Below are positions 11,760 to 64,000 of a DNA stretch of 64,000 nt, piece by piece. The stretch is taken from the IMG/VR virus record IMGVR_UViG_3300035698_035366, positions 124,001-188,000 of that record. One strand, written 5' to 3'. The position numbers were made by a program, and so were the translations under genes. The stretch's first letter is position 1, and each line of letters begins with the position of its first letter. The notes beneath the pieces were generated by a model, which had not been told where the DNA came from, searched no databases, and was given only the letters and a program-made list of their open reading frames with translations.

Positions 11760-11771
11760 GAAGAGCATATC

Positions 11772-11811
11772 TACCGGACGGTGCTCCCCGCGCCGTCCGG
11801 TACCTTTCTTT
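11772..11811 (+). terminator. Intrinsic terminator
   Basis: TACCGGACGGTGC / GCGCCGTCCGGTA stem followed by CCTTTCTTTT. Confidence 0.8.
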
Positions 11812-11881
11812 TATAGTATTACTTAAAAGATAAGCGTAGGATATAAGTATGGTTGGTTACAAAAAATGAGGAAAAATAAAA

Positions 11882-30099: not shown

Positions 30100-31124
30100 A
30101 TATAGTTGATGAAGTACGAAGGCATTTACCTTCAAAAAGACGGCAAGTCGCCGCGGGTTGGATTTCATTTGACTGTCCAGCCTGCATCGCAGCGGGTGAG
30201 TCTAGAGAAGATACCCGGAGTCGAGGTGGGATATTGTTTTCACCTGATGGTGGTATTGTATATCATTGTTTCAATTGTAAGACCAAAGCCCGTTGGGAAC
30301 CAGGAAATCGTTTTTCTGCGAAGATGAAGTTTGTATTTAAGCAATTGGGTATCCCATATGAGCTTATACGTAAAATGGATTTCGAAGCTTGGAGAATGGA
30401 AGAATTAGAGAAGCTCGATGATAATTCATTAGCTGAACGTTATCAGAAGCTTGAACTAAATTTTGATGTGAAAAGCTTACCCAAAGGAACAAAATCATTT
30501 AATGAATGGTTGAAAGAAGAGATAATTCCGGAAAAGTGCATTGATGCAATAAACTATGTCAAAGAACGTGGCCCTCATTTACTAACACATTATAATTTTT
30601 ATTGGTCTCCCGGTCGAAGGAACCAAATGAATGAGAGAGTAATTGTACCATTCACCTATAAAGGTGATATTGTTGGTTATAACGCACGTTTATTTGGTAC
30701 CGGTAAGAATAGATATTATGGTGATATTCCTACAAATTTCCTGTTTAATAATCAAGTATTGGAAAAACATGATAGGAAATATGTATTAGTAGTTGAAGGC
30801 ATTTTTGACGCATATGCAGTTGATGGTGTATCGGCATTGGGATCAACTCTATCTAAAATACAACGACAATGGATTAATGAATCCGGATTGATACCAGTTG
30901 TCATAGCTGATAAAGATAAAGGTGGACAATCTTTGATTGATGCAGCTATTGAAGAACGTTGGGCCGTGTCTTTTCCATATTGGGAAGAAGGCATCGGGGA
31001 TCCTGCAAAAGCTGTGGAAGAATATGGTAGATTGTTTGTTATCAAGTCAATAATTGATAATATAGAGACTAGTAAAATAGCTATTAATGTAAGAAGGAAA
31101 AGGTGGTATGACAATGCAAATTAA
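30096..31124 (+). CDS. DNA primase
   Basis: Zn finger CPAC…HCFNC and TOPRIM VLVVEGIFDA…ADKD. Confidence 0.9.
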   Translation: MNIVDEVRRHLPSKRRQVAAGWISFDCPACIAAGESREDTRSRGGILFSPDGGIVYHCFNCKTKARWEPGNRFSAKMKFVFKQLGIPYELIRKMDFEAWRMEELEKLDDNSLAERYQKLELNFDVKSLPKGTKSFNEWLKEEIIPEKCIDAINYVKERGPHLLTHYNFYWSPGRRNQMNERVIVPFTYKGDIVGYNARLFGTGKNRYYGDIPTNFLFNNQVLEKHDRKYVLVVEGIFDAYAVDGVSALGSTLSKIQRQWINESGLIPVVIADKDKGGQSLIDAAIEERWAVSFPYWEEGIGDPAKAVEEYGRLFVIKSIIDNIETSKIAINVRRKRWYDNAN

Positions 31125-31422
31125 TTTTGAGATAAAAGCAACTGAAATTGAATATATGCCTTATTCAACGGTTTATAATACAACTTCAAATGGCGGACAG
31201 CCTGTTTATGATAACATTGCAAAATATCTAGATCAAAACGTTGAAACTCGCAATCTAGAAATAGATGATAGACTAAATGAACTGGTGAGACGTTTAGATA
31301 GGCTTGAAGAACAAATGAACCAAGAAAAAGAAATTCGAGAAAATAATGAATTCGTCAACGATTTGTATATGCAATATCAATCTGCATTGAAATTAGTAAC
31401 AGATTCAGATAATATTAAATAA
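31108..31422 (+). CDS. Small coiled-coil hypothetical protein
   Basis: 104-aa ORF between primase and helicase. Confidence 0.55.
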   Translation: MTMQINFEIKATEIEYMPYSTVYNTTSNGGQPVYDNIAKYLDQNVETRNLEIDDRLNELVRRLDRLEEQMNQEKEIRENNEFVNDLYMQYQSALKLVTDSDNIK

Positions 31423-31446
31423 TAAACAGTTGGAGGTTTATAAGTA

Positions 31447-32868
31447 GTGAATTACGGCGAAGACACACAGAAAATTTTATTGAGTCTTTTATCGAGTAGC
31501 GAGGAATTATTCATTCGTGTTAGGTCAATTATCAAACCGTATTACTTTGATAAGAAATTCCAAAAGACCGTAAAGTTTATTATCACATATGCTGACGAGC
31601 ATAATGCATTACCTGATGAAAGAATAATTTCGTCCGAGACTGGTTTAGAAGTTGAGACCTTTCCGGATATCGATAGGGGAACCGGAGAATGGTTTCTAAA
31701 AGAGATTGAAAATTTCTGCAAGTATAAGGCATTGGAATATGCTGTAGAATCAGGCCCTGAAATGATTGATAAGGGCGACTATGCTAAACTTGAGAAAAGA
31801 ATTAAAGATGCAATCCTTATTAGCCTGAATAAAGAACTTGGCGTTAATATGTTTGATAACCCAGCATCGGTAATCCAAAGATTAAAAGACAATAATGGTC
31901 AAGTGGGTACAGGTTGGAAAACTATGGATACTATTATCTATGGTGGATTTAATCGAGGAGAATTAGAAATCTTTGCAGGTGCTCCAGGTACCGGTAAGTC
32001 AATTTTCCTACAAAACTTAGCAATCAATATGATTGAACAAGGATTAAATGTTGTTTATTTCACATATGAATTGAGTGAAGAATTAGTTGCCCAGCGGCTT
32101 ATGGCAATGATGGCTGGTGTATCAACCAAAGATGTTATGCGAAAAACCGATGATGTATCTCTTACCATCATGCAACAAAAAAGAAAGAATTCATATGGTG
32201 AGTTACACGTCAAATACATGGGTGCAGGTTCCTGTACAAACGATCTTAAAAGTTATTTGAAGGAATATGAAATACAAACAGGTAACAAAATTGATGTAAT
32301 TGTTCCTGATTACTTGGATTTGATGAGTCCAAATAATAAACGGGTAAGCCCATCAGATTTGTTCATTAAAGATAAGTATGTTTCGGAAGAATTGCGTTCA
32401 CTAGCTGCTGAACTAAATGCTATTTGCATTACGGCATCACAGTTAAACAGAGCAGCAATGGAAGAACAGGATCACGAAATGTACCACATCGCTGGTGGCG
32501 TCTCAAAGATTAACACCGCTGATAATGTTATGACGATTTATACTTCTGAAAGTTTGAAAGAACGTGGTGAATATCGGGTACAGTTTATTAAAACTCGATC
32601 ATCAGCCGGCGTCGGTAAACGATTGAATCTCGCGTTCTCCACCAATTCATTACGGCTTAGTGATTTGGATGAAGATACTGCAACACAAACCAGACAAACA
32701 ATTACTGATATTGGTACCACTTTAAATCGCAAAACTACAATTAAGGCTGTCGATGCGGTGCAAGACGACATTGATGAAAATGATCAAACCGAGAAAGCCA
32801 AACAACAAATTGCTGATAAAGGTAAAAATCTTCGGAGCATTATTAGCAACATACGCAATGATGGTTAA
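31447..32868 (+). CDS. Replicative DNA helicase (DnaB/T4 gp41-like)
   Basis: AGAPGTGKS, VPDYLDLM, ITASQLNR. No intein. Confidence 0.95.
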   Translation: MNYGEDTQKILLSLLSSSEELFIRVRSIIKPYYFDKKFQKTVKFIITYADEHNALPDERIISSETGLEVETFPDIDRGTGEWFLKEIENFCKYKALEYAVESGPEMIDKGDYAKLEKRIKDAILISLNKELGVNMFDNPASVIQRLKDNNGQVGTGWKTMDTIIYGGFNRGELEIFAGAPGTGKSIFLQNLAINMIEQGLNVVYFTYELSEELVAQRLMAMMAGVSTKDVMRKTDDVSLTIMQQKRKNSYGELHVKYMGAGSCTNDLKSYLKEYEIQTGNKIDVIVPDYLDLMSPNNKRVSPSDLFIKDKYVSEELRSLAAELNAICITASQLNRAAMEEQDHEMYHIAGGVSKINTADNVMTIYTSESLKERGEYRVQFIKTRSSAGVGKRLNLAFSTNSLRLSDLDEDTATQTRQTITDIGTTLNRKTTIKAVDAVQDDIDENDQTEKAKQQIADKGKNLRSIISNIRNDG

Positions 32869-32923
32869 TTACAATTTACACCTAAGCTAAATAGTTGATA
32901 GAATTGTATTTAGGAGTATTAGT

Positions 32924-33529
32924 GTGAGTAATTTACACCATTTAGATCAAATGAAGGACTTCATCGCCGCCGCCTATGGCGTCGAACGACCAAGTCTTAG
33001 TGAAGAATCCGAAGAACAATATATTCCAAAATTTGCTCTAGACACATTCAATATGAGTGAAACGTTACTTGAAATGAACATTGACCGTATAAGCAGCATG
33101 TTGGGTGACCGAACGTCTGCAGAAATTGTTCTCGAATCATGCGAAAATTTACGTAATAAAATGGCTGAACAAGATTACCAAGCAGTATACGAAGTAGGTG
33201 AATGTTTAGCGTCAATATTGAAAGATGTTACCAATGACGATACCCCAGAACAATTAACTGAAAGTATGCAACGTAATCGTTATATGTATGATTCAGTCAT
33301 TGAGGATATAAGTGATAAAAAAGAAAAGGTATTGGCTGAAAGTATAGAAAAAATTATCGACGATTGGGAAATGTATTCCGATACTGAAGATAGGGAGGGA
33401 ACATTCTCTGAAGGCGTGGAATATGGTTATACTCTAGCAGCACAAAAAATGCGTGAGATTCTAGAAGCACATACAAAAGAAGAGATTGAACAAGACGAAC
33501 GCGAGGAAAATAATGAAAAACATTATTGA
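32924..33529 (+). CDS. Acidic putative head protein
   Basis: After GCTAAATA (32886); LSEE, LLE, VLES, LTES, LAES sites. Confidence 0.55.
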   Translation: MSNLHHLDQMKDFIAAAYGVERPSLSEESEEQYIPKFALDTFNMSETLLEMNIDRISSMLGDRTSAEIVLESCENLRNKMAEQDYQAVYEVGECLASILKDVTNDDTPEQLTESMQRNRYMYDSVIEDISDKKEKVLAESIEKIIDDWEMYSDTEDREGTFSEGVEYGYTLAAQKMREILEAHTKEEIEQDEREENNEKHY

Positions 33530-33752
33530 AGAACTTGATAAGATTGAAAAAGATAATAATAGATATCTTTTTATTGAATCAAAAGCCAACAACGCAATTG
33601 TCGCTGCAATAAATGTATTGCGTCAAATTAATGAAACCTTTAACCCGGAAGAAGCAGATGAACTAAAGCGTCGGCTGGTTAATTCAATCAAAGGGGAAGA
33701 TCCTCGGAAATTCCAACGAAAGATTCGCCAGTTAAAGGAATCTAAGGAGTAA
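33513..33752 (+). CDS. Small hypothetical protein
   Basis: ATG 33513 after GAGGA; MKNIIEEL…LKES. Confidence 0.6.
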   Translation: MKNIIEELDKIEKDNNRYLFIESKANNAIVAAINVLRQINETFNPEEADELKRRLVNSIKGEDPRKFQRKIRQLKESKE

Positions 33753-46924: not shown

Positions 46925-47611
46925 ATGATCCCAATAGTTGAAAAATTCGAATATCCAACGCTAAAACAGATCAATAATTATCAGGGAACAAAAACTCGCC
47001 GTTACGAAACCCCCGATAATGAAAAGCTTCCAAGCGTAACAACAATCCTTAGTGCTACTGGTGATAAAAGCGGTCTTAAAGCTTGGCGAGATTGGGTAGG
47101 CGACAAAGAAGCCGACCGTCAGATGAAAGAAGCTGCTGGTATTGGTTCGTTGATGCACACACATCTAGAAAATTACATTGATGGTGTTGAGCGCCCAAGG
47201 GGAAATAACTTGGCTCGGGTTATGGCCAGAAAGATGGCGGACGAAATTATTAACCGGGGATTGTTTGAGGTTAGTGAAATATGGGGATTAGAGAAGAAAC
47301 TATATTTCCCGGGCCTCTATGCCGGAACCGCCGATGTTATTGGTCTCTGGCGTGGCCTTCCTGCAATTATGGATTATAAGTCATCAAAGAAGATTAAAAA
47401 AGAAGAACATATGCAGGATTATTATTGTCAATTATGCGCTTACTCGATGGCCCATGATGAATTGTTTGGGACAAAAATAAAACACGGTGTTATTTTTATG
47501 GCTGATAGAGAATATAATTACCAGTCGTTTATCATCGATGGTATTAAATTTCAAGAGAAACAGGATATGTGGCTTGGTCGCTTAGATGAATATTACAATA
47601 AACAAATTTAA
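46925..47611 (+). CDS. PD-(D/E)xK exonuclease (RecB/Cas4/MGME1-like)
   Basis: LPSVTTIL, G-S-L-M-H, YAGTADV, IMDYKSS, QLCAY. Confidence 0.85.
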   Translation: MIPIVEKFEYPTLKQINNYQGTKTRRYETPDNEKLPSVTTILSATGDKSGLKAWRDWVGDKEADRQMKEAAGIGSLMHTHLENYIDGVERPRGNNLARVMARKMADEIINRGLFEVSEIWGLEKKLYFPGLYAGTADVIGLWRGLPAIMDYKSSKKIKKEEHMQDYYCQLCAYSMAHDELFGTKIKHGVIFMADREYNYQSFIIDGIKFQEKQDMWLGRLDEYYNKQI

Positions 47612-54276: not shown

Positions 54277-55416
54277 ATGAAAAAGTTTAGCGTTTTCAAT
54301 ACTAATAATCATTCCGATCATACAAAAAATAAAGCTTTTCTTGATGAATCTGGATCAATAACATTACAGAGGTATGAGTCTTTAAAATACCGACAGTTTG
54401 ATAAGCTTACAGATAAATCATTGGGTTTTTTCTGGAGACCAGAAGAGGTTGACGTGGTCGGTGATTCGAAAGATTTTAAAGAACTCAATGAGCATGAACG
54501 TCATATTTTTACATCAAACCTAAAACGACAAATACTTCTAGATTCTGTACAAGGTAGATCACCCAATTTGGCATTCTTACCAATTGTAAGTGTTCCTGAA
54601 ATTGAAGCATTTATTGAAACATGGGCATTCTTTGAGACAATTCATAGTCGAGCATATACGCATATCATCCGTAATGTTTATTCGAACCCAAGTAAGGTGT
54701 TTGATGAAATGATGGACTTGGAAGAAATTGTAAAATGTTCAAAGGATATATCGGTACATTACGATGAATTAATAGAATTATCAAATTGGTATAGATTGCT
54801 TGGCGAAGGAACACATACCGTCAATGGTGAAAAAATACCAGTTAAGCTATATGACTTAAAGAAATTGTTATGGCTTGCAATCATGAGCGTTAACATATTG
54901 GAAGGAGTACGTTTTTATGTGAGTTTTGCATGTTCATGGGCGTTCGCAGAATTAAAGAAGATGGAAGGAAACGCAAAACTCATTAAATTTATTGCTAGAG
55001 ATGAAAATGTTCATCTTGCAGCAACGCAACAATTAATAAAAATCTTACCACAAGACGACCCAGATTTTATAAAGATTAGAAAAGAAACAATGGATCAATG
55101 TACTGAAATGTATGTTGAAGCTGTTAGTCAAGAAAAAGATTGGGCCAAATTTCTATTTAACGATGGATCAATGATTGGACTCAACGAATTATTACTATCT
55201 GAATATATTGAATGGATTGCTTCAAAGAGAATGCAAGCAGTGGGGATAAAAAGCCCATATAGCGTGCCACAAGCAAATCCATTACCCTGGACACAGAAGT
55301 GGATCTCAGGAAGTGAAGTACAGGTAGCACCACAAGAAACTGAAATATCAAGCTATGTCATTGGTGGAACCAAGCAAGACGTAGATGAAGATACATTTAA
55401 AGGATTTGAACTATGA
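54277..55416 (+). CDS. nrdB: Class Ia ribonucleotide reductase beta subunit
   Basis: FFWRPEE, LDSVQGR, ETIHSRAY, EGVRFY, RDENVH. Confidence 0.97.
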   Translation: MKKFSVFNTNNHSDHTKNKAFLDESGSITLQRYESLKYRQFDKLTDKSLGFFWRPEEVDVVGDSKDFKELNEHERHIFTSNLKRQILLDSVQGRSPNLAFLPIVSVPEIEAFIETWAFFETIHSRAYTHIIRNVYSNPSKVFDEMMDLEEIVKCSKDISVHYDELIELSNWYRLLGEGTHTVNGEKIPVKLYDLKKLLWLAIMSVNILEGVRFYVSFACSWAFAELKKMEGNAKLIKFIARDENVHLAATQQLIKILPQDDPDFIKIRKETMDQCTEMYVEAVSQEKDWAKFLFNDGSMIGLNELLLSEYIEWIASKRMQAVGIKSPYSVPQANPLPWTQKWISGSEVQVAPQETEISSYVIGGTKQDVDEDTFKGFEL

Positions 55417-56040: not shown

Positions 56041-56394
56041 ATGCTAGAAATTAAATCCCAAAAATTAAAAACAACTGACATCGCAGTTCTAAAATTAAAT
56101 TCCGGAGAAGAAGTTATTGGTCGTGTTACCAATATTGCCAATGGCTCCATTACGATTACCAAGCCTGGAACCCTTGGACCAGTTCAAACTGCACAAGGAA
56201 TTACAATAGCAATGCAGCCATTTATGTTTGGTGTAGATGCAGATGGATCATTTGTATTCACTTCTGACAAATATATCGTTGCGCTACCAGCAATGAAACA
56301 AGCGGCAGATATGTATACCAAGCAGACATCAAGTATTCAGTCAGCATCGTCCGTTGACCTTTCGGGAATTGATTTATCAAATTTAAAAACTTGA
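56041..56394 (+). CDS. Hypothetical protein (Sm-like beta pattern)
   Basis: VLKLNSGEEVIGRV. ATG 56041 follows AAGGA. Confidence 0.6.
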   Translation: MLEIKSQKLKTTDIAVLKLNSGEEVIGRVTNIANGSITITKPGTLGPVQTAQGITIAMQPFMFGVDADGSFVFTSDKYIVALPAMKQAADMYTKQTSSIQSASSVDLSGIDLSNLKT

Positions 56395-56418
56395 CAATGA
56401 CCACAATTGTGTTATAAT
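56391..56418 (+). promoter_or_regulatory. Sigma70-type promoter
   Basis: TTGACA-16 nt-TATAAT with extended TG. Confidence 0.7.
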
Positions 56419-56569: not shown

Positions 56570-57385
56570 GTGGATAAAACTCCCCTTGGTGATCGCATGA
56601 AAGCGTATGAAAATCAGGAAACTGGACGCAAATTAATGCCTGGACTTCCTGTTTATGCACGAGTAGATGGGCGAAGTTTCAGTAATTTTACAAAGAAATT
56701 TAAACGACCATTTGATTATGATATGTCGGCTATGATGGTCGCAACCACAAAATACCTAGTTGAAGAAACTCATGCTATCGTTGGTTATACCCAAAGCGAT
56801 GAGATTAGCCTTGCGTGGTTACCAAGCGAAGATCAAAATAACATGATTTTTGCAGGGAAGATTTTCAAATTGGTTAGTAACATTGCATCACTAGCAACGG
56901 TTAAGTTTAACCATTTGGGCGTTAACAGTGAAAACAAAGAAATTCTAAAGGCAACGTATTCTAAATTACCAACCTTTGATTGTCGAGTATGTCAAATACC
57001 CGATGAGGATGAACTCCTGAGCATGTTTATTTGGCGTGAACGGGATGCAATGAAAAATGCAGTTAGTATGGCAGCATCCGCCTATTTCTCCCACAAGTCA
57101 TTGAATGGTCTCACTGGTTCAGAAAAGCAGGAAAGGCTTTTTCAAGAAAAGGGGATTAATTTTAACGATTATCCGTCATTCTTCAAGCGTGGAACTTATG
57201 TTCGTCGTGTCAATGTTGAACGTCATCTCACCGATTATGAGATGGAAGACATTCCAGAACAACATCGTCCAACTGGTCCAGTTATTCGAAGTAAAATTGT
57301 TAGTCTTGATATTCCACCAGTTGCAAAATTGGATAATGCAAAGACTGTATTGTTTGGTGATCTTCCTTCATCTTGCTATAAATAA
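56570..57385 (+). CDS. tRNA(His) guanylyltransferase / Thg1-like protein
   Basis: RMKAYE, ARVDGRSF…RPFD, YTQSDEIS, FDCR, WRERDA…N. Confidence 0.9.
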   Translation: MDKTPLGDRMKAYENQETGRKLMPGLPVYARVDGRSFSNFTKKFKRPFDYDMSAMMVATTKYLVEETHAIVGYTQSDEISLAWLPSEDQNNMIFAGKIFKLVSNIASLATVKFNHLGVNSENKEILKATYSKLPTFDCRVCQIPDEDELLSMFIWRERDAMKNAVSMAASAYFSHKSLNGLTGSEKQERLFQEKGINFNDYPSFFKRGTYVRRVNVERHLTDYEMEDIPEQHRPTGPVIRSKIVSLDIPPVAKLDNAKTVLFGDLPSSCYK

Positions 57386-57394
57386 GTAAAGAAC

Positions 57395-57559
57395 ATGAGA
57401 AACTTAGTTAAGTATCCGTTGACTCTAGATGAAATAGAGAAATATTTGGAAGATCAAATGAATCAATTGCAAAATTTGGAAGAGAGACCAATTGGCAGCA
57501 TGGAACCATTAATTTTACAAACCTTGTTATCGTGGGTTAAAGAGAAGAAAGAGGGGTAA
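57395..57559 (+). CDS. Small hypothetical protein (54 aa, not in the ORF track)
   Basis: MRNLVKYPLTLDEIEK…KEG* fills the gap after TATAAATA (57377). Confidence 0.45.
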   Translation: MRNLVKYPLTLDEIEKYLEDQMNQLQNLEERPIGSMEPLILQTLLSWVKEKKEG

Positions 57560-57563
57560 GTTA

Positions 57564-58016
57564 ATGGAATGGGAACAATTACAACCTTCACAATTGCAAG
57601 AACTCGTTGATTACGAAGTTGGTATTTTTGATGAACCTGACCGAAGCACTGTTCAAGAATATCTTAACCATATAAAAACAAATAATTTACATATTCACGT
57701 ATTGCGTGACTCTTCCGGAATTATTGGTTGTTATCAAATATTACCTGAAGAAGATCGGGTTTTTATGTGTGGTTTCTCCATACATCCAAATCATCGCGGT
57801 GGGGATTTATCTAGAATACTTATGAATCATCTTATCCACAATTACCTTGATCAAGGGATTGTTTGTAAAACATTAGCCAATCATCCAGCAATGCGCAAAA
57901 TATTGAATTCATCTGGTTGGAAAAATGATCTAGATAAATTTGAAAAGGGAATTTTGTGGAGTTGGTGGTATATCAATAATGATACCATTGCTAAAAAAGC
58001 TGGCTTGAAGCCTTAA
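57564..58016 (+). CDS. GNAT-family acetyltransferase
   Basis: FSIHPNHRGGDLS acetyl-CoA loop and N-H-P-A…L…SGW. Confidence 0.75.
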   Translation: MEWEQLQPSQLQELVDYEVGIFDEPDRSTVQEYLNHIKTNNLHIHVLRDSSGIIGCYQILPEEDRVFMCGFSIHPNHRGGDLSRILMNHLIHNYLDQGIVCKTLANHPAMRKILNSSGWKNDLDKFEKGILWSWWYINNDTIAKKAGLKP

Positions 58017-60697
58017 ATTTCTAGTTCTTTTGGAATTGGGATACCATCACCTTCTAAACGTTCTTTAAATCGCTGGAATACAATCTTACGCAATTCAATT
58101 GGTTTCTTTTTAAGTAACGGCATTATGGTTTCAACTCTATCTAGATCCGCGGCGGTTACATCAGTCTTTACATCACCAAACAAAAATTGGGCAATATCAT
58201 TTGGGTTATCCATAGACCACTTTTTTCCAAACTTATCAATTTCAACGCTGGTGAATTCTTTCTTAAAATTCTCTATGTCTACCGTCTGTTCACCCTTTAG
58301 TCTTGGCTTACTAGCAAGATCAACGCCTTGCTTAATTTCCTTTTTCGTAAGCTTTTTTCTTGGGCGCAATTTGGCGCGGATATTTAATCCAGTGCTTGGT
58401 GCAAAGGCTGGGCCAAATCGACCAACCAATTCATCATCTCCTTCATCATAGAAGATTTGGTTCATAGCACTAGCCATACTTGCTATTAATATCGTACGAA
58501 GAACACCTTTATATTTTGATTTATCACCCGCAGAATGATATCCAAATTTTAGGGTATTTGCATTACCAAACATAAAATCTACTTGCACCATGCCAGTGCG
58601 TTCTTTATCTGTTTGATCATTTATGCTTTCATCGTAACCAGCAATTTTCATTGGGAATGAAATGACCGCTCCGAGCCTTGGATTAAGACCGGCTTTTTTG
58701 AGTTCATTGAATACTTCTTGTTTATCATGCAACCCATCATCCAGCGCAATATCAATATCACCTGAGAATTTGGCCTTACCAACGGATCCAAGAGTACCAT
58801 TCTTAATTTCACTAAATGGTATATCAGCAGCCTTTGCGATTTCTTTTAACGTGGCGGGAATTTCCCCTATATAAATTGCACCACCCCCCTCAATAGCTCG
58901 ACCACCTTCCATAATTATAGATTCAGTAACGGACTCATGAGCAAGAAGAGCAATCAAATCATCCATTTGTTCTTCATCAAAATCACCAAGTTCAGAATAT
59001 TGTTTTTGCAATTCCGAGCGAATCTTATTAACTGCTAATGCAGTTTTTCCACGGCGTTTTGCATTGGTATAGAACGATCGTAGTTTGGTGAGCCTTCCAC
59101 CTTTTGATAGGTCAGTTGCAACTCTAGCGACATCATCGCCCTTGTTTGCCAAAGACTTACCAATTTTTATAGCACCTTGTCCTAGTTTACCAACACCACG
59201 TGCAAGAGCTGAAACTCCTTTACCAACACCTGAGATAATTCCTTCGTCGATATATTCCTCAGTTGTAATGGATGATAATTTATCACCAGCAAAAATTACA
59301 ATCAAATCTTCTGGTGTTTTAGCTGTTTTCAATGCTTTTAAATAATCAGCAAGTAATTCATGTGTTTCTGCAAATGTTTGTAATGTACGTTCTTTTACAC
59401 CTTCTTGATAATCTATGTTAGCATACTGACCAGTTTTGTTTTTGAAATTCTCTAAATTATCTAATAGTTCTTTGTTAGCTACCTTAACTTGTTGGACAAA
59501 AACCTTCTTAACTTTGGGGAAATTCATATCTGATGCTAGATTAACTGTTTGTTCTTCTGCACTGTTACCGAATTTTTTAGCATACCTCTTCGCTTGGGCA
59601 CCACTTAATGGACCATGACCCATTACATTGGCTACTTCATGTCGCATTTTCATAACAACTGATTCTGAGTTACGACTATCATAAATGTCGTTCCGAACTA
59701 GCCAATTATAATTATTGATTGAAGTGAAACCTTCTTTGTCTACGATTTTAGTCATTGCTCCTTCTTGATCTTTAGCAACGACCCCTTCGATCCAACCCCC
59801 GTTCTCAATATCAGGACCAAAGTCAGATTGTTGATTATGCACAAAAGCAGAAAGGAGTTGGTTTTTAATCTCCAGCTTGGATGACATTAATGCCTTTTTG
59901 ATTTCTTCTTGTTTTTCTTTTACCAGGGCCTTAATTTCTTTCCAATTGCCGTCACCAAGCCAATCTGGCTTTTTATTAAGTGGAATGGCAATAACTTCTT
60001 TAACTAAGAGTTCTTTTTCACCAACTTTGATATTTCTATCAAGTAAAACTTCTATCTTCTTAACTTCCTCATCTACTATCTGTTGAGCTTCTTCATTGCT
60101 CATTTGATCAGCACGTTTTTTTGGAACAACTGCAACGACCCATTCATGTTCCTCATCTCTACGATTAATGGAGATACCATTTTCAGTATATGGAACATTT
60201 TCAACTTGAACAGTTACTTCATGATCTTCCAGAACTTTGTTCATGTGTTCAAGAGATTTTCTAGCCTCATCACTGTCCTTTTCAGAGTCTTTTGAAAGTA
60301 AAATTATTTGGTTAATTTCACCACTATAAAGAACAGCATTTGGTAATTTTCCAAATAAAATCTCTACGGAGAAAACATCACCTGTTTGTATAATCTTTCG
60401 TTTACGTAATGGAGTCATTAATTTCTTTAGGGCATCATGCGCAGAACGAAAACCAGTCGACATAAATTTAGTTCCCCATTCATCTCCATTACGAATCCGT
60501 CGATCGTCACCTTTGTTTTCCCTACTTGTAAAAAACCCGTCATCATCGAAGCCAAATCTCATAGCGGCACCATCGACTTTTTCGGAGATTTCCCATGAAT
60601 TGAGGTTCTTTACAGCTCGAAGAAACTCATCCTCGCTTAGATCCTCAATATGGGTAATACCCTCGTTTAGATCTACATATAATTCGTTGAGTATCAT
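58013..60697 (-). CDS. Polyprotein: RNA/DNA-ligase-like adenylation domain + Pol-beta-family nucleotidyltransferase domain
   Basis: ISEKVDG (motif I), EGVVAK (IV), KIVDK (V); later LGSVGK…SGDIDIA and VQVDFM. Domains are bounded by LNE|G, IDE|G and IME|G. Confidence 0.7.
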   Translation of the reverse strand: MILNELYVDLNEGITHIEDLSEDEFLRAVKNLNSWEISEKVDGAAMRFGFDDDGFFTSRENKGDDRRIRNGDEWGTKFMSTGFRSAHDALKKLMTPLRKRKIIQTGDVFSVEILFGKLPNAVLYSGEINQIILLSKDSEKDSDEARKSLEHMNKVLEDHEVTVQVENVPYTENGISINRRDEEHEWVVAVVPKKRADQMSNEEAQQIVDEEVKKIEVLLDRNIKVGEKELLVKEVIAIPLNKKPDWLGDGNWKEIKALVKEKQEEIKKALMSSKLEIKNQLLSAFVHNQQSDFGPDIENGGWIEGVVAKDQEGAMTKIVDKEGFTSINNYNWLVRNDIYDSRNSESVVMKMRHEVANVMGHGPLSGAQAKRYAKKFGNSAEEQTVNLASDMNFPKVKKVFVQQVKVANKELLDNLENFKNKTGQYANIDYQEGVKERTLQTFAETHELLADYLKALKTAKTPEDLIVIFAGDKLSSITTEEYIDEGIISGVGKGVSALARGVGKLGQGAIKIGKSLANKGDDVARVATDLSKGGRLTKLRSFYTNAKRRGKTALAVNKIRSELQKQYSELGDFDEEQMDDLIALLAHESVTESIIMEGGRAIEGGGAIYIGEIPATLKEIAKAADIPFSEIKNGTLGSVGKAKFSGDIDIALDDGLHDKQEVFNELKKAGLNPRLGAVISFPMKIAGYDESINDQTDKERTGMVQVDFMFGNANTLKFGYHSAGDKSKYKGVLRTILIASMASAMNQIFYDEGDDELVGRFGPAFAPSTGLNIRAKLRPRKKLTKKEIKQGVDLASKPRLKGEQTVDIENFKKEFTSVEIDKFGKKWSMDNPNDIAQFLFGDVKTDVTAADLDRVETIMPLLKKKPIELRKIVFQRFKERLEGDGIPIPKELEI

Positions 60698-60722
60698 GTT
60701 TGTGCCTTTAATTATGTGCTAT

Positions 60723-60730
60723 TATTTAGC
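60723..60730 (-). promoter_or_regulatory. Late-promoter variant GCTAAATA
   Basis: Upstream of the ligase/NTase polyprotein. The same 8-mer lies upstream of genes at 2556, 28878, 32886, 37522 and 48827. Confidence 0.55.
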
Positions 60731-62837
60731 GACGTCTAATTGTATTAAACAGGGTTCGGAATTCTATAAATGCCGTGGTCATTTCGCCTCTCGAGTCCGA
60801 ATATGCAATGTCATATGCTAGATCCATTAATCTCTCAATTTCATCACTGGTTGCCTTCTTTCGAACAATAACAACTAAACGTACCCATCTAAATGGCACT
60901 GGATATCCCGGATACTTATCACCTCGAACTGGTCTATAACCAGTATCAGGAACTGATTCCTCTGGCACCGGCACTATGGTATCAGACATTTTTTCTGTTT
61001 CAATTTCAGTTGTTATATTAAACGATGATTCAGTTGTGGTTTTCTTCTCCCCGAGTTCAGTAGTCTGAGACCCATCTGACCATTTAATTGTTGTAACTGT
61101 CCAAGTTGTTAAAGTGGTAACGGTTTCAGTTTTAATTTGGAAATGATGATCTTCATAAACAACTGTATGAACATCACCATTGTCATGTGTGTGGGTTTCT
61201 GTTCTTTGTTCAACATGGGTCTCTTGACGAATTGGATCCAAAACTTGGATATTTTCAATTTTTTCAAGGTTTACAAATCTACCAGTTTCTTTTAGTTCTT
61301 TCTCCAAAATGGGTGTAAGTTTACTGTCGATAACTTCGTGAGAATGCGATACACTAACATCATCCTTGATTGTAATGCCCTCAAATGGTTCACCCTGTTT
61401 AACACCAATTGTACCATCAGAATATTTGGTTGTTGTAACCCATGCTTTGGTTATTATTGTGGAAATTTTTATCGTTGTAACGTGTTTGTAAAAACGAACC
61501 AACTCCCACAGGATAGAACCATCACTTTGTTCCGTTTCTTGTTCCTTATCTTCAAACGTAGTAACTGTTATTGGATCACCTTCACTTACCACTGTTGATA
61601 ATGTTTTGTATTCAGTCTTAACATCAACCACAGTAATTTCCTCAACAACCGGCTCTGGTTTAGCTTTTTCAATAATTGGTTCTAGATCAACATATAACGC
61701 TCTATTTGCTGAGGTTTGTGTAGCTCTTGAATGTAATGCTAATGTATCTTTGATAGATGAATTAACAACCCATTCATGAACATGTTCAACGTCCTTTGCA
61801 TTAGCGGTTGTTTCCATTCCTTGAGCATAAAGGGCGCAGGCTCCAGCAACGTGGGGTGAAGCCATCGAGGTACCTGAAAGCATATTTTCAGAATCAACGC
61901 CATCTTTTCCAGCAGCGCAAATATAATGGCCAGGGGCAAAAACGTCAACTGTTTTACCATAATTGGAGAATGAAGAAATTCTATCCTTGATATCATGTGA
62001 ACCAACAGTAACAGCGCGGGCAACTTCAGCAGGCATAACATCGTAACCAACTTCTGCAAGATCCCTGCCATCGTTACCAGCAGCAACAACACAAATTATT
62101 CCTGCATTGATGCAGTCATTTACAACCTGTTCTTCGGTCTTGTGTGCTGGCCCACCAAGTGATAGGTTCATAATGCTTGGGTTCATATTACCTTGAGCAC
62201 GCTTATTACGGTGATGCTTTAGGCACGCATCAATTCCAGAAACGATAGCAGCAAGAGAAGCACCACCAGTTTCAAACACCTTACTAATAAGAAGATTGCA
62301 TTCCTTAGCTACGCCATACTTCACCCCACCAACTGTAGATGCAACATGAGTTCCATGTCCCTGTTGATCAAACCCATAACCTGTTTGTCCTTTCTTCGCA
62401 TAGTAATCGAAGATTGGAACAGCGCGGCCTTGGAAATCATTATGAGAAAAGTTACAACCAGTATCAACTATATAAACGTCAACATTTTTTCCTGTTCGGT
62501 TATATTCGTATTTTCCATTAAATGGGTACCAGTTGCTATCATTCCATTCGTCACCGTGTGTAATTCTACTTAGTCCCCAATTATCACCAAAACCATATCG
62601 GGAAACAGCAATATTCTGAATAGCTTTAAATTCAACAATAGCATCCGCGGGTGCGACATGTTCGATCTCTCGTTCAGTTTTCAACTTGGTCTTTTTCATA
62701 TCGTCCATTGTAATTTTGAACATACGCTCTAAACCACGATAATCTTCGTCAATCGTAGCGTTATATCTAGAAGCTAGATTTTTGAATCTTTGGTTACTAC
62801 AACCCATTTTAACTGTTACGATATATTCTTTGTTCAT
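60726..62837 (-). CDS. Subtilisin-like S8 serine protease with I9-like prodomain and C-terminal Thr/Val/Glu-rich repeats
   Basis: VYIVDTG (D), GHGTHVAS (H), AAGN, SGTSMASPHVAG (S). RBS AAGGAG. Confidence 0.92.
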   Translation of the reverse strand: MNKEYIVTVKMGCSNQRFKNLASRYNATIDEDYRGLERMFKITMDDMKKTKLKTEREIEHVAPADAIVEFKAIQNIAVSRYGFGDNWGLSRITHGDEWNDSNWYPFNGKYEYNRTGKNVDVYIVDTGCNFSHNDFQGRAVPIFDYYAKKGQTGYGFDQQGHGTHVASTVGGVKYGVAKECNLLISKVFETGGASLAAIVSGIDACLKHHRNKRAQGNMNPSIMNLSLGGPAHKTEEQVVNDCINAGIICVVAAGNDGRDLAEVGYDVMPAEVARAVTVGSHDIKDRISSFSNYGKTVDVFAPGHYICAAGKDGVDSENMLSGTSMASPHVAGACALYAQGMETTANAKDVEHVHEWVVNSSIKDTLALHSRATQTSANRALYVDLEPIIEKAKPEPVVEEITVVDVKTEYKTLSTVVSEGDPITVTTFEDKEQETEQSDGSILWELVRFYKHVTTIKISTIITKAWVTTTKYSDGTIGVKQGEPFEGITIKDDVSVSHSHEVIDSKLTPILEKELKETGRFVNLEKIENIQVLDPIRQETHVEQRTETHTHDNGDVHTVVYEDHHFQIKTETVTTLTTWTVTTIKWSDGSQTTELGEKKTTTESSFNITTEIETEKMSDTIVPVPEESVPDTGYRPVRGDKYPGYPVPFRWVRLVVIVRKKATSDEIERLMDLAYDIAYSDSRGEMTTAFIEFRTLFNTIRRR

Positions 62838-62885
62838 ACCTGAATCTCCTTAGTCGGAATTATATAATTATTTATCATAAAAGTG

Positions 62886-62916
62886 TTGACTTTCTATAGG
62901 GATTGTTGTATAAATA
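62886..62916 (+). promoter_or_regulatory. tmRNA promoter (sigma70 -35/-10 overlapping a T4-type late TATAAATA)
   Basis: TTGACT-17 nt-TATAAA(TA). Confidence 0.75.
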
Positions 62917-62920
62917 TACT

Positions 62921-63220
62921 TGTAAATGCTTGATGCTAATAATAGCAAATCAGGACCCGGGCTCGTTCCCGGCATCTCCACCAACACTTCGGTGGCATCT
63001 CTTTTTTATGGGGATGAAAGGTTCGACTGGTGCGTGAAAGTTTAGTTTAGTTTACATCGGATTGGTGAGCCGACCACAAAGTAACCCGTTTTAAATGCAA
63101 ACGACAATGCTCCCGTACAGGAAATGCGCCTAGCGGCCTGATCCTGGTAGGGAAATTCCGGAGACGAATGCGATCTTCGGTGGAGTTTGGAGGGCACTCA
63201 TCATCAGGAGCCCTCCGTTT
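62921..63220 (+). ncRNA. ssrA: Circularly permuted two-piece tmRNA
   Basis: Acceptor piece ends CATCTCC-A-CCA (62973-62983) and comes before the coding piece starting GGGGATG (63010). The two form a 7-bp stem with G3:U70. Tag ANDNAPVQEMRLAA* at 63097-63141. Outer boundaries are approximate. Confidence 0.92.
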
Positions 63221-63999
63221 TATTCCATAATTTCCAATTCAAGTTCCTCTAATAATATAGAAGAATCACTGCTTTTAGAACTATTTTCAGATACTGTTAA
63301 AAATTCGCAATTTTTTATATGTCCTATTATGGATGGGTCGATTTGATTGTTATAACCATAATGTATACTTAATCGATGATCTTTAACAACCCCACCTGGA
63401 TTATTTTTAGGATGAAACCATCCCAATTTAACCAATAAATCATATCCTTTGATTCCCTTTATATTTTCTGGTGTAATATGAAATGAACAAATAGAACGAT
63501 ATGAATGTATATCTTTTTCAGAACTGGATAAAATACGTTGTTGTTCCTCATTTAATGAGGTTATTTCGTGGTCCATAATTAATTGTAATTCTTTAATTAA
63601 TTCAGAGTATTTAGGATTGGTAATTTCTATTCTCTTTTGTATATGCTCCAATTTTCTAAACGTTGAGAAATTCCTTAAAAACATTTTTCGTATAGATTTG
63701 GTCTTGCGTTTTTGATTAAGTTTATAATAAATAGATTTTGGTATTAAATTATAGGCTAACAGCATCCTGTCCGCAAATATATAATTAGCAAACCCTACAT
63801 CCGATTGATCTATATCAATATTAAATAATGATTTTAACATTAATGATAATTCACTATGTGTTATATTAGGTAATTTCTTTTTGATAACGCCACCAAAGGA
63901 CTGATGCAAATCTGCTAACCCGTCAACTACAATTTCGGTATATGGATAATCGTTACTGTCTGAAGATAATGAACTATTAATATAGGCCCGTAGTTTGAT
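63220..63999 (-). CDS. HNH-like endonuclease; 5' end runs off the window
   Basis: KDHRLSIHYG…IIGHIKNCEFL…ENSSKS. The frame stays open from 63909 to the window edge. Confidence 0.65.
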   Translation of the reverse strand: MKLRAYINSSLSSDSNDYPYTEIVVDGLADLHQSFGGVIKKKLPNITHSELSLMLKSLFNIDIDQSDVGFANYIFADRMLLAYNLIPKSIYYKLNQKRKTKSIRKMFLRNFSTFRKLEHIQKRIEITNPKYSELIKELQLIMDHEITSLNEEQQRILSSSEKDIHSYRSICSFHITPENIKGIKGYDLLVKLGWFHPKNNPGGVVKDHRLSIHYGYNNQIDPSIIGHIKNCEFLTVSENSSKSSDSSILLEELELEIME

Positions 64000-64000
64000 A

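What the first reader, a model, noticed from the sequence alone, without database searches (positions are those of the whole stretch)
56570..63220. Cluster that could form a translation-rescue / RNA-repair island
Seen: within 6.6 kb lie a Thg1-like enzyme, a GNAT, the ligase-like/NTase polyprotein, a protease and a tmRNA. Known: many anti-phage systems cleave tRNA or stall ribosomes, and phages counter with RNA repair (T4 Pnk/Rnl1). Inference: 5'-end repair, ligation, possible 3'-end addition and ribosome rescue act together. The genes are on different strands and promoters, so functional linkage is unproven.
Basis: inference. Interest (0 to 1): 0.6.

Follow-up and report, generated by a model that had tools for sequence, protein, structure and literature searches.

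The report
Jumbo-phage RNA-repair and ribosome-rescue neighbourhood
A salt-lake jumbo phage keeps a tRNA 5'-end repair enzyme, a fused ligase/polymerase and its own tmRNA side by side, but phages carrying the same genes scatter them, so this is a lineage-specific juxtaposition of separate modules rather than one co-evolved rescue system.

Summary
They are a bacterial-type Thg1-like protein (TLP), a GNAT, an 894-aa fusion of an RNA-ligase-like and a PolX-like module, an intact S8 subtilase, and a two-piece (alpha-type) tmRNA with tag ANDNAPVQEMRLAA. ARAGORN missed the tmRNA; Rfam found it.

They form three transcription units. Just outside the window the theme continues with cREC, a canonical RNA ligase, a HAD/kinase pair and PTH2. 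Six of ten RNA/translation units fall within 17.8 kb (P about 7e-4).

The linkage holds only in the phage's two closest relatives. In 79 other viral loci carrying the ligase module, none has Thg1, GNAT, S8, cREC or Rnl within 10 kb. In nine relatives' records with a tmRNA-like hit (five complete), it lies 28-204 kb from the ligase.

The only conserved linkage is ligase->PolX, fused or adjacent in 42 of 79 loci. That pair sits beside DnaB helicase in 75 of 79 loci and beside primase in 62 of 79. This suggests duplex gap-filling and nick-sealing rather than tRNA repair.

Phage tmRNA/SmpB and jumbo-phage RNA-repair toolkits are already published. The undescribed ligase-PolX family is the most interesting residue.

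The parts
56391..56418 (+). Perfect sigma-70-type promoter (TTGACA-16-TATAAT with TG) upstream of the TLP-orf54-GNAT unit
   Evidence: 12 of 12 matches. A consensus match only, not shown to be functional.
56570..57385 (+). Thg1-like protein (bacterial TLP type), a 3'-5' nucleotidyltransferase of 271 aa
   Evidence: PF04446 at 101 bits and PF14413 at 29 bits. Best solved relative is the B. thuringiensis TLP 4kgk at 134 bits; eukaryotic Thg1 scores 37-53 bits. The DG and SDE catalytic motifs are kept and the HINNLYN region is absent.
57395..57559 (+). 54-aa ORF of unknown function
   Evidence: Conserved in L001 at 62% identity. No family hit.
57564..58016 (+). GNAT acetyltransferase, 150 aa, substrate unknown
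   Evidence: PF00583 at 31.8 bits. Kept next to the ligase-PolX gene in L001 and L002. Absent from the 79 other ligase loci.
59264..60697 (-). N-module of the 894-aa protein (residues 1-478): RNA-ligase-like covalent nucleotidyltransferase with a helical C-terminal domain
   Evidence: Invariant K40xD42G43, E112, E304-G305 and K317 in 54 homologues. AF2 pLDDT 91.8. VIA Z 11.7 to NgrRnl, 10.3 to TbREL1, 10.0 to T4 Rnl2, 9.5 to T4 Rnl1; DNA ligases at or below 9.2. PF09414 only 17 bits, below its cut-off.
58931..59263 (-). Gly/Lys-rich linker (residues 479-589), found only in this phage and its 73%-identical relative
   Evidence: phmmer with residues 479-600 as query finds it only in P0001 and P0002. 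P0003-P0005 and P0014 fuse the modules without it.
58016..58930 (-). C-module (residues 590-894): family-X-polymerase-like nucleotidyltransferase (palm plus thumb)
   Evidence: Invariant G637-S638, D647, D649 and D707. AF2 pLDDT 92.3. Foldseek Pol beta/mu/lambda at E 5e-4. VIA Z 9.3 to Tth PolX, 8.8 to Pol beta, 8.4 to ASFV PolX (153 of 176 residues aligned). TUTases and CCA enzymes align on the palm only, Z at most 7. Atlas neighbour clusters carry DNA_pol_B_palm or thumb.
60726..62837 (-). S8 subtilisin-like serine protease, 703 aa, with a Thr-rich repetitive C-terminal half; co-directional with the ligase-PolX gene, 28 nt upstream
   Evidence: PF00082 at 116 bits. The DTG, HGTH and SGTSMA triad motifs are present. 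67% identical in L001. In L002 only the catalytic domain remains and it is split across frames.
62886..62914 (+). Sigma-70-like promoter of the tmRNA gene (TTGACT-17-TATAAA)
   Evidence: Read from the sequence. The TTGAC...GTATAAATA element is conserved in L001, and GTATAAATA in all three relatives.
62868..63219 (+). Two-piece (circularly permuted, alpha-type) tmRNA gene: acceptor piece ending CCA at 62981-62983, coding piece starting GGGGAUG at 63010
   Evidence: RF01849 at 76.3 bits (E 6e-19) and RF04321 at 79.8 bits. The acceptor stem GGGGAUG/CAUCUCC contains the G3-U alanine identity pair and an ACCA end. Homologous tmRNAs occur in L001 (87-96 bits) and L002 (97 bits).
63097..63141 (+). 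tmRNA tag reading frame GCA...GCC TGA, encoding ANDNAPVQEMRLAA*
   Evidence: The relatives encode ANDNNVASVEEVFGLAA and ANDNFEPMLAAA, so the peptide pattern is kept while the DNA diverges.
63220..64000 (-). 268-aa protein of unknown function; runs past the window end to genome position 188026
   Evidence: phrog_23051 at 80 bits, function unknown. Its C-terminal ~70 aa recur about 1 kb from Thg1-like genes in L106 and L107.

Best explanation
The region juxtaposes independent modules of a jumbo phage's auxiliary gene set, and the juxtaposition is specific to this phage's lineage. It is not one co-evolved system. (a) The TLP is a templated 3'-5' polymerase. It most likely rebuilds damaged tRNA 5' ends or maintains G-1 on tRNA-His; the phage's own tRNA-His has a G-1:C73 pair that could template this. 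(b) The two-piece tmRNA, transcribed from its own promoter, works with the phage's own SmpB (encoded 49 kb away). Together they free ribosomes stalled on broken messages and tag the products with an ANDN...LAA degron. (c) The 894-aa protein joins a PolX-like templated polymerase to an Rnl2/Rnl5-like nick-sealing ligase. It most likely fills short gaps and seals the resulting nick in duplex nucleic acid, a 'ribo-patch'-type repair linked to replication. I infer this because the pair is a conserved unit that sits with primase, DnaB helicase and an exonuclease in other phages; in this lineage it has been moved about 25 kb away and inverted. (d) The GNAT and the S8 protease have no demonstrable link to RNA or translation. 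Shown here: gene identities, folds, motifs, transcription-unit layout and the conservation pattern. Inferred: all substrates and activities.
For: Identities. Three transcription units. Linkage fails outside the lineage: 0 of 79 ligase loci have Thg1, GNAT, S8, cREC or Rnl within 10 kb. 0 of 16 Thg1 loci have the ligase, PolX, S8 or GNAT. 0 of 3 Rnl relatives have any cluster member or a tmRNA. tmRNA-to-ligase distance is 28-204 kb in nine records with a tmRNA-like hit, five of them scoring over the Rfam cut-off. TLP-to-tmRNA distance is 27-48 kb in G026, G027, G031 and G039. The TLP is absent at this locus in L002. Ligase->PolX is conserved: 42 of 79 loci, always same strand and immediately downstream, 38 of them with a gap of 260 nt or less, and the fusion recurs. 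Context: DnaB helicase in 75 of 79 loci, primase in 62 of 79, PD-(D/E)XK exonuclease in 22 of 79. The same order occurs in Phosso and PA5oct. The same block lies at genome 153-171 kb in this phage. Folds. The ribo-patch model for Rnl5 with a PolX-type polymerase is from PMC5397189. Own SmpB. The tmRNA tag is conserved as peptide.
Against: This phage does show a significant local excess of RNA/translation genes: six of ten units in 17.8 kb, P about 7e-4. The tmRNA stays next to the ligase-PolX gene in L002 despite a local rearrangement, which could reflect selection for proximity. The ligase module resembles RNA ligases more than DNA ligases. Pairing an RNA ligase with a Pol-beta-superfamily NTase is the hallmark of Rnl-RlaP RNA repair. 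The conserved 'replication' block also contains MS-detected virion proteins in PA5oct, so the synteny may reflect clade architecture rather than function. Four of five complete relatives also have a canonical DNA ligase, so the enzyme is not simply the replicative ligase. No activity or expression data exist; only DNA runs hold this sequence.
Confidence: 0.55

Rival explanations
1. A functional RNA-repair and ribosome-rescue island. The TLP mends tRNA 5' ends. The PolX-like module restores lost 3' nucleotides and the ligase-like module reseals cleaved tRNA, like RlaP plus Rnl. The tmRNA frees the stalled ribosomes. Together with the adjacent cREC-Rnl, kinase/HAD and PTH2 genes, the set is kept together for co-expression against host anticodon nucleases.
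For: Local clustering of six of ten RNA/translation units in 17.8 kb, P about 7e-4 (genes). The arrangement is kept in L001. In L002 the tmRNA sits directly beside the ligase-PolX gene after a rearrangement. The ligase module's best structural matches are RNA ligases. The Rnl-RlaP precedent exists. The genome has no canonical RlaP that would otherwise fill that role.
Against: No member other than PolX accompanies the ligase in 79 loci. The same genes are scattered in complete relatives. The units lie on different strands with different promoters. The C-module matches PolX palm plus thumb, i.e. templated gap-fillers, and does not match PF10127. SmpB, the CCA enzyme and the tRNA array lie elsewhere in the genome. 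The PTH2 gene carries an in-frame TAG.
Confidence: 0.25
2. The 894-aa protein is a true polyprotein. The co-transcribed S8 protease cuts the lineage-specific Gly/Lys-rich linker, releasing separate ligase and polymerase enzymes as found in relatives.
For: The roughly 110-aa linker exists only in the two phages where an intact S8 gene lies 26-28 nt upstream on the same strand. In L002 the fusion has no linker and S8 is degraded and displaced. The modules are separate genes in Phosso.
Against: Three genomes only. No cleavage motif was identified. Linker-less fusions show that the fused form is viable. Subtilases in phages have many other possible roles.
Confidence: 0.05
3. The ligase-PolX protein is the phage's replicative DNA ligase and gap-filler for Okazaki-fragment maturation.
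For: It sits next to primase and DnaB helicase in 62-75 of 79 loci. Neither PF01068 nor PF01653 DNA ligase is found in this 296-kb record.
Against: Four of five complete relatives that have the ligase module also encode a canonical ATP- or NAD-dependent DNA ligase. This record is only about 79% complete. There is no OB domain, and the best matches are RNA ligases.
Confidence: 0.12

Closest known systems
Jumbo-phage RNA-repair / translation-maintenance toolkits (Iyer et al. 2021, PMC7824862) and T4 Pnkp-Rnl1
   Same: This phage has the same parts list: RNA ligase, cREC, kinase/phosphatase, CCA-adding enzyme, Thg1, PTH2 and many tRNAs. The counter-defence rationale is the same.
   Different: That survey does not mention tmRNA, SmpB or PolX. 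Here several parts sit close together, but the arrangement is not conserved. No RlaP (PF10127) is present.
Phage-encoded tmRNA and SmpB (huge phages, PMC7162821; two-piece tmRNA in marine phages such as Melnitz, PMC9004378)
   Same: A complete two-piece alpha-type tmRNA with an ANDN...AA tag and its own early-type promoter; SmpB also phage-encoded.
   Different: No glutamine riboswitch or other Rfam element was found beside it. ARAGORN, the detector used in both papers, misses this tmRNA.
Bacterial Thg1-like proteins (BtTLP, PDB 4kgk; tRNA 5'-end repair, PMC3061083)
   Same: 134-bit match over the catalytic core with conserved metal-binding motifs. Like TLPs, it lacks the eukaryotic HINNLYN anticodon-recognition segment.
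   Different: It is phage-encoded and its activity is untested. Its possible use on the phage's own G-1:C73 tRNA-His is an inference.
Nick-sealing RNA ligases Rnl5/Rnl2 (NgrRnl, DraRnl, T4 Rnl2) and the 'ribo-patch' repair model with a PolX-type polymerase (PMC5397189)
   Same: The adenylyltransferase fold and motifs I, III, IV and V match. It is physically coupled to a PolX-like polymerase, which is the partnership that model postulates.
   Different: Sequence similarity is below the Pfam threshold. It has a different accessory domain: a helical C-terminal domain rather than the Rnl5 N-terminal domain. Substrate is unknown.
Rnl-RlaP RNA-repair pairs (PF10127; bioRxiv 10.64898/2025.12.29.696909)
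   Same: An RNA-ligase-type enzyme tightly linked to a Pol-beta-superfamily nucleotidyltransferase.
   Different: The NTase here does not match PF10127. It has a PolX palm-plus-thumb architecture. Its conserved neighbours are primase, helicase and exonuclease.
Minimal viral PolX plus ligase (ASFV PolX/AsfvLIG) and bacterial LigD polymerase-ligase fusions
   Same: A small PolX-like gap-filler (Z 8.4 to ASFV PolX, 153 of 176 residues aligned) paired or fused with an ATP-dependent ligase.
   Different: The ligase module lacks an OB domain and is closer to RNA ligases. LigD's polymerase is a primase-type enzyme, not PolX (background knowledge, not tested here).
Pfam DUF6267 (PF19782)
   Same: Viral clusters nearest the N-module carry DUF6267 in about 23% of members. 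The PolX-like module is fused to DUF6267 in P0007, P0011 and P0012. There is weak similarity over motifs IV-V.
   Different: The N-module itself does not score against DUF6267. The hhalign probability is only 2.9%. No paper in the library mentions the family.

Membership tests
tmRNA, two-piece/permuted (Rfam RF01849, RF04321) | Covariance-model score above the gathering threshold | tested here: met
   76.3 bits against 50 and 79.8 bits against 47.
tmRNA, two-piece/permuted (Rfam RF01849, RF04321) | tRNA-like domain with T-arm, acceptor stem carrying the G3-U pair, and a 3' CCA; acceptor piece encoded upstream of the coding piece | tested here: met
   GGGGAUG/CAUCUCC-ACCA. CCA lies at 62981-62983, upstream of the 5' strand at 63010.
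tmRNA, two-piece/permuted (Rfam RF01849, RF04321) | Tag reading frame with a GCA resume codon, ending in a hydrophobic ...AA degron and a stop | tested here: met
   ANDNAPVQEMRLAA*. Relatives keep the ANDN...(L)AA pattern.
tmRNA, two-piece/permuted (Rfam RF01849, RF04321) | Processing into two RNAs, alanylation and SmpB-dependent trans-translation | not testable with these tools
   No RNA runs hold the sequence. A phage SmpB equivalog is present.
Thg1 superfamily, TLP branch | Thg1 catalytic domain and C-domain above the Pfam cut-offs, with metal-binding Asp/Glu residues | tested here: met
   101.2 and 29.3 bits. The rvDGrsF and SDEIS motifs align with 4kgk.
Eukaryotic-type Thg1 (tRNA-His-specific G-1 adder) | HINNLYN anticodon-recognition motif, and closest similarity to eukaryotic Thg1 | tested here: not met
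   The motif region is replaced by a short 'amkn' segment plus a gap in the alignment to 3wbz. Scores are 53 bits against 134 bits for BtTLP.
ATP-dependent RNA ligases (covalent nucleotidyltransferases) | Motif I KxDG lysine and motifs III, IV, V conserved across the family | tested here: met
   K40, D42, G43, E112, E304, G305 and K317 are invariant in 54 sequences.
ATP-dependent RNA ligases (covalent nucleotidyltransferases) | Adenylyltransferase fold, with RNA ligases as the best structural matches | tested here: met
   Z 11.7, 10.3, 10.0 and 9.5 to NgrRnl, TbREL1, Rnl2 and Rnl1. DNA ligases score 9.2 or below. All Foldseek top hits are RNA ligases, but at E of 4e-3 or weaker.
ATP-dependent RNA ligases (covalent nucleotidyltransferases) | Sequence membership in Pfam RNA_ligase (PF09414) | tested here: not met
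   17.4 bits against a cut-off of 27; 15.7 bits in the genome scan.
ATP-dependent RNA ligases (covalent nucleotidyltransferases) | Ligase-adenylate formation and RNA end joining | not testable with these tools
   Needs biochemistry.
Family X DNA polymerases | GS...DxD...D catalytic palm together with the thumb subdomain | tested here: met
   G637, S638, D647, D649 and D707 are invariant. Palm plus thumb align over 153-169 residues at Z 8.4-9.3.
Family X DNA polymerases | Sequence membership (PF14792/PF14791) and the 8-kDa/fingers domains | tested here: not met
   No Pfam hit at E up to 1. Only related Atlas clusters carry these families, in 17-19% of members. The best matches cover palm and thumb only, as in the minimal ASFV PolX.
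RlaP (PF10127) | Match to the PF10127 profile | tested here: not met
   No hit for the C-module or anywhere in the genome.
Subtilase S8 | Peptidase_S8 domain with the Asp-His-Ser triad | tested here: met
   115.6 bits. DTG, HGTH and GTSMASP are present.
GNAT acetyltransferases | Acetyltransf_1 domain above the cut-off | tested here: met
   31.8 bits against 20.7. No NCBIfam subfamily matches, so the substrate is unknown.
Conserved RNA-repair operon or island (in the sense of Pnkp-Hen1, RtcAB, Rnl-RlaP) | Gene linkage maintained across divergent genomes | tested here: not met
   Linkage holds only in relatives with 53% or more identity. It is absent in 79 ligase loci, 16 Thg1 loci and 3 Rnl loci, and in complete genomes.
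Conserved RNA-repair operon or island (in the sense of Pnkp-Hen1, RtcAB, Rnl-RlaP) | Co-transcription | tested here: not met
   Three units lie on two strands with separate promoter-like sites. Only consensus scans were run; no transcript data exist.

The most novel reading that the evidence does not exclude
The ligase-PolX pair is an undescribed, almost exclusively viral enzyme family. It has no Pfam, PHROG or NCBIfam model; 646 representative homologues are known; and the fusion recurs. It physically couples an Rnl2/Rnl5-like nick-sealing RNA ligase to a minimal PolX. That would make it a natural 'Rosetta-stone' fusion for the ribo-patch repair model: the polymerase fills a gap with a few (ribo)nucleotides and the RNA-type ligase seals the 3'-ribo nick. 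This would operate as a core function of PA5oct/Phosso-like jumbo phages, alongside their canonical DNA ligases.
Probability: 0.3. Interest if true: 0.6.

Novelty: new variant of a known kind. Interest (0 to 1): 0.35.

Why it matters
The result tempers a tempting reading.

Three useful points remain. First, this phage carries a near-complete trans-translation kit (two-piece tmRNA plus SmpB) and a broad tRNA-repair kit. That fits the published view that large phages insure their translation against host tRNA-targeting defences. Second, ARAGORN misses this tmRNA, so surveys that relied on it may undercount permuted phage tmRNAs. Third, the ligase-PolX family is a conserved, uncharacterised enzyme pair in a large jumbo-phage clade. 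Its biochemistry could show what nick-sealing RNA ligases are for, a question the Rnl5 literature still lists as open.

Tried and rejected
- ARAGORN on the window found no tmRNA. Rfam overruled this.
- Megablast of the region against the phage collection found nothing.
- PDB sequence searches with the 894-aa protein and with both module profiles gave only noise.
- Pfam, PHROGs and NCBIfam gave nothing for the 894-aa protein.
- RlaP identity for the C-module is rejected by sequence.
- 'The replicative DNA ligase' is weakened, because four of five complete relatives also have canonical DNA ligases.
- The DUF6267-to-ligase relationship is only hinted at: hhalign probability 2.9%, Atlas co-clustering.
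- Annotated neighbourhoods of Thg1 in BcepSauron, CcrColossus and fHe-Yen9-04 were uninformative, being mostly hypothetical proteins.
- Expression could not be tested. Only salt-lake DNA runs hold the sequence.
- One genome search failed on a 50-locus limit and was repeated with 50 loci.
- No alternative genetic code was invoked.
- The interrupted PTH2 was read with X at its stop for the tblastn query only.

Full report
**Source.** The window is positions 124001-188000 of a 296,119-bp IMG/VR virus record. The record has 38% GC and 34 tRNA genes at 245-279 kb. CheckV estimates it as 79% complete. The same 894-aa protein also occurs on a 407,795-bp contig. Public runs holding the DNA are all salt-lake metagenomes, and none is RNA. 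It is a jumbo phage. Its tmRNA type suggests an alphaproteobacterial-type origin for that gene, but the host is unknown.

**Observation.** All five features are present.
- The Thg1-like gene (56570-57385, +) scores 101 bits on PF04446 and also hits Thg1C.
- The GNAT (57564-58016, +) passes PF00583.
- The 703-aa protein (60726-62837, -) is an S8 subtilase with an intact triad.
- ARAGORN reports no tmRNA. Rfam finds a permuted tmRNA at 62868-63219 (+), with both RF01849 and RF04321 above gathering.
- The tmRNA alignment and sequence show a T-arm and a GGGGAUG/CAUCUCC acceptor stem with the G3-U pair. ACCA is encoded upstream of the 5' strand, which is the two-piece gene order. The tag frame encodes ANDNAPVQEMRLAA*.
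- The tmRNAs of two relatives encode ANDNNVASVEEVFGLAA and ANDNFEPMLAAA. The tag is therefore conserved as a peptide while the DNA drifts.

**The 894-aa protein.** It has no hit in Pfam, PHROGs, NCBIfam or PDB sequences. An exhaustive search found 646 representative homologues. It also showed that the protein combines two modules that exist alone elsewhere: an N-module of about 470 aa and a C-module of about 280 aa. A Gly/Lys-rich linker of about 110 aa occurs only here and in the 73%-identical relative.

- N-module: the family keeps K40xDG, E112, E304-G305 and K317 invariant, which are ligase motifs I, III, IV and V. The AlphaFold model (pLDDT 91.8) best matches RNA ligases. Scores are NgrRnl Z 11.7, TbREL1 10.3, T4 Rnl2 10.0 and T4 Rnl1 9.5, ahead of DNA ligases and capping enzymes. 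It has a helical C-terminal domain rather than an OB fold.
- C-module: the family keeps G-S...D-x-D...D invariant. Its model (pLDDT 92.3) matches family-X polymerases over palm and thumb. Scores are Tth PolX Z 9.3, Pol beta 8.8 and ASFV PolX 8.4 with 153 of 176 residues aligned. TUTases, CCA-adding enzymes and CD-NTases align on the palm only. It is not RlaP/PF10127.
- ESM Atlas neighbours of both modules are almost exclusively viral. Some carry DNA_pol_B palm or thumb, RNA_ligase or DUF6267 annotations.
'Polyprotein' is unsupported.

**Transcription units.** A perfect sigma-70 consensus promoter precedes TLP-orf54-GNAT (56391-56418). S8 and the ligase-PolX gene are co-directional on the minus strand, 28 nt apart. 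The tmRNA has its own TTGACT-17-TATAAA element, conserved in L001.

**Wider inventory.** The phage encodes SmpB at equivalog level (187 bits) 49 kb from the tmRNA. A CCA-adding-type enzyme lies at 91 kb. Immediately beyond the window end lie:
- a cREC domain protein at genome 189.2 kb;
- a canonical PF09414 RNA ligase at 190.5 kb;
- a HAD/NT5C-like protein and an AAA_33 kinase at 195.7-197.4 kb;
- a PTH2 at 198.2 kb, interrupted by an in-frame TAG.

Treating operon-like pairs as single units, six of ten RNA/translation units fall in 17.8 kb (simulated P about 7e-4). The unit list is post hoc, but every family searched was counted whether it fell inside or outside the cluster.

**Conservation test.**
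- Close relatives keep the arrangement. L001 (73% identity) is collinear from the tmRNA to the RNR genes.
- L002 (53% identity) keeps S8 (degraded), tmRNA, ligase-PolX and GNAT. There the tmRNA lies directly beside the ligase gene, and no TLP is present at the locus.
- Beyond that lineage the linkage disappears. Among 79 IMG/VR loci (1.19 Mb) carrying the N-module, none has a Thg1, GNAT, S8, cREC or Rnl homologue within 10 kb, and one has SmpB.
- In 50 whole records searched, 12 have a tmRNA-like hit, including all five complete genomes. In the nine records with a usable hit it lies 28-204 kb from the ligase.
- In complete relatives the TLP, Rnl, SmpB, tmRNA and ligase genes are scattered. The only tight pair is tmRNA-SmpB in G015.
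- Sixteen other Thg1 loci contain no ligase, PolX, S8 or GNAT. One has an Rnl and six have tRNA genes nearby.
- Three relatives of the canonical Rnl have none of the cluster members and no tmRNA within 10 kb.

**What is conserved.** The PolX-like module follows the ligase module on the same strand in 42 of 79 loci, and in 38 of these the gap is 260 nt or less. The pair is embedded in a conserved block. DnaB-like helicase occurs in 75 of 79 loci about 2.8 kb upstream, DNA primase in 62 of 79, and a PD-(D/E)XK exonuclease in 22 of 79 downstream. The same order is annotated in Sinorhizobium phage Phosso and Pseudomonas phage PA5oct. In PA5oct, MS-detected virion proteins are interspersed. In this phage the block lies at genome 153-171 kb, and the ligase-PolX gene lies about 25 kb from DnaB, inverted. 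The juxtaposition with the tmRNA is therefore a rearrangement specific to this lineage.

**Mechanism.** I take the TLP to be a tRNA 5'-end repair or G-1 maintenance enzyme. It is closest to BtTLP and lacks the eukaryotic anticodon-recognition motif. The phage tRNA-His encodes a G-1:C73 pair that could template re-addition. This is inference.

The tmRNA with the phage SmpB performs trans-translation. The published ideas are maintenance of the hijacked translation apparatus or selective tagging.

For the ligase-PolX enzyme, the fold evidence points to a nick-sealing RNA-type ligase plus a templated gap-filling polymerase, and the context evidence points to a replication block. Together they fit the 'ribo-patch' scenario proposed for Rnl5 with a PolX-type polymerase. 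The RNA-repair alternative, analogous to Rnl-RlaP, is not excluded. A role as the sole replicative ligase is unlikely, because four of five complete relatives also have canonical DNA ligases. This incomplete record has none.

**Novelty.** Jumbo-phage RNA-repair toolkits including Thg1, and phage tmRNA/SmpB including two-piece forms, are published. The island as such is a lineage-specific arrangement of known kinds. The ligase-PolX family appears uncharacterised: it has no family model, and no paper in the library was found for DUF6267 or for such a fusion. It is the part worth following up.

**Verdict.** Interest is moderate to low.

Noticed in passing
genome 235699-236127 (+), outside the window (L003:1501-1929): The phage encodes its own SmpB (NCBIfam equivalog, 187 bits), 49 kb from its tmRNA. 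In relative G015 the SmpB and tmRNA genes are adjacent, 87 nt apart.
   Followed up: partly
genome 189245-198583, just past the window end (L007): A further run of RNA-repair-type genes: cREC_REC (87 bits), RNA ligase PF09414 (72 bits), two DUF7695 proteins, an arginase-family protein (293 bits), an NT5C/HAD-like protein, an AAA_33 kinase (85 bits) and PTH2.
   Followed up: partly
genome 198230-198583 (L117): The PTH2 peptidyl-tRNA hydrolase gene has one in-frame TAG (...ITADP*LLDSYE...). ARAGORN called no suppressor tRNA. It could be a pseudogene, a sequencing error or read-through. A second, weaker PTH2-like match lies at genome 106613-106879.
   Followed up: no
window 62868-63219: ARAGORN fails to call this permuted tmRNA, which Rfam scores well above threshold. 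The published phage tmRNA censuses relied on ARAGORN, so two-piece phage tmRNAs may be undercounted.
   Followed up: no
genome 251054-251130 (tRNA-His): The phage tRNA-His has an 8-bp acceptor stem (G-1:C73) followed by CCCA, i.e. one extra C before the CCA. Its 3'-end maturation may need trimming and the phage's CCA-adding enzyme (genome 91.4 kb).
   Followed up: no
window 58931-59263 (residues 479-589 of the 894-aa protein): The Gly/Lys-rich linker is present only in the two phages where an intact S8 protease gene lies directly upstream. In L002 the fusion lacks the linker and S8 is split and displaced. With three genomes this is a correlation only.
   Followed up: partly
P0007, P0011, P0012, P0013 (homologues): The PolX-like module also occurs N-terminal to DUF6267. 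Some ligase-module relatives carry a cytidylyltransferase-like (PF01467) domain. DUF6267 shows an EG...KLV motif resembling ligase motifs IV-V, so it may be a ligase-like domain.
   Followed up: partly
L001:8039-9696 compared with window 55413-55416: The 73%-identity relative has two extra ORFs between the RNR small subunit and glutaredoxin: 389 aa with a weak NUMOD3 hit, and 163 aa. In the window these two genes abut. This looks like a homing-endonuclease-type insertion.
   Followed up: no
L106 and L107, about 11732-11938: The C-terminal ~70 aa of the 268-aa protein next to the tmRNA (window 63220-64000, -) recur about 1 kb downstream of Thg1-like genes in two other large phage contigs.
   Followed up: no
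whole record G000; L010, L103, L123: IMG/VR labels the 296-kb record a 'provirus' at 79% completeness. The same phage also appears as a 61.6-kb record, and its protein on a 407,795-bp contig. The 'provirus' call is probably a trimming artefact of a jumbo-phage genome of about 400 kb.
   Followed up: no
window 30141-33749 and 46964-47602: The conserved primase, DnaB helicase, small-protein and exonuclease block that flanks the ligase-PolX pair in other phages lies here. The ligase-PolX gene has been relocated about 25 kb from DnaB and inverted in this lineage.
   Followed up: partly
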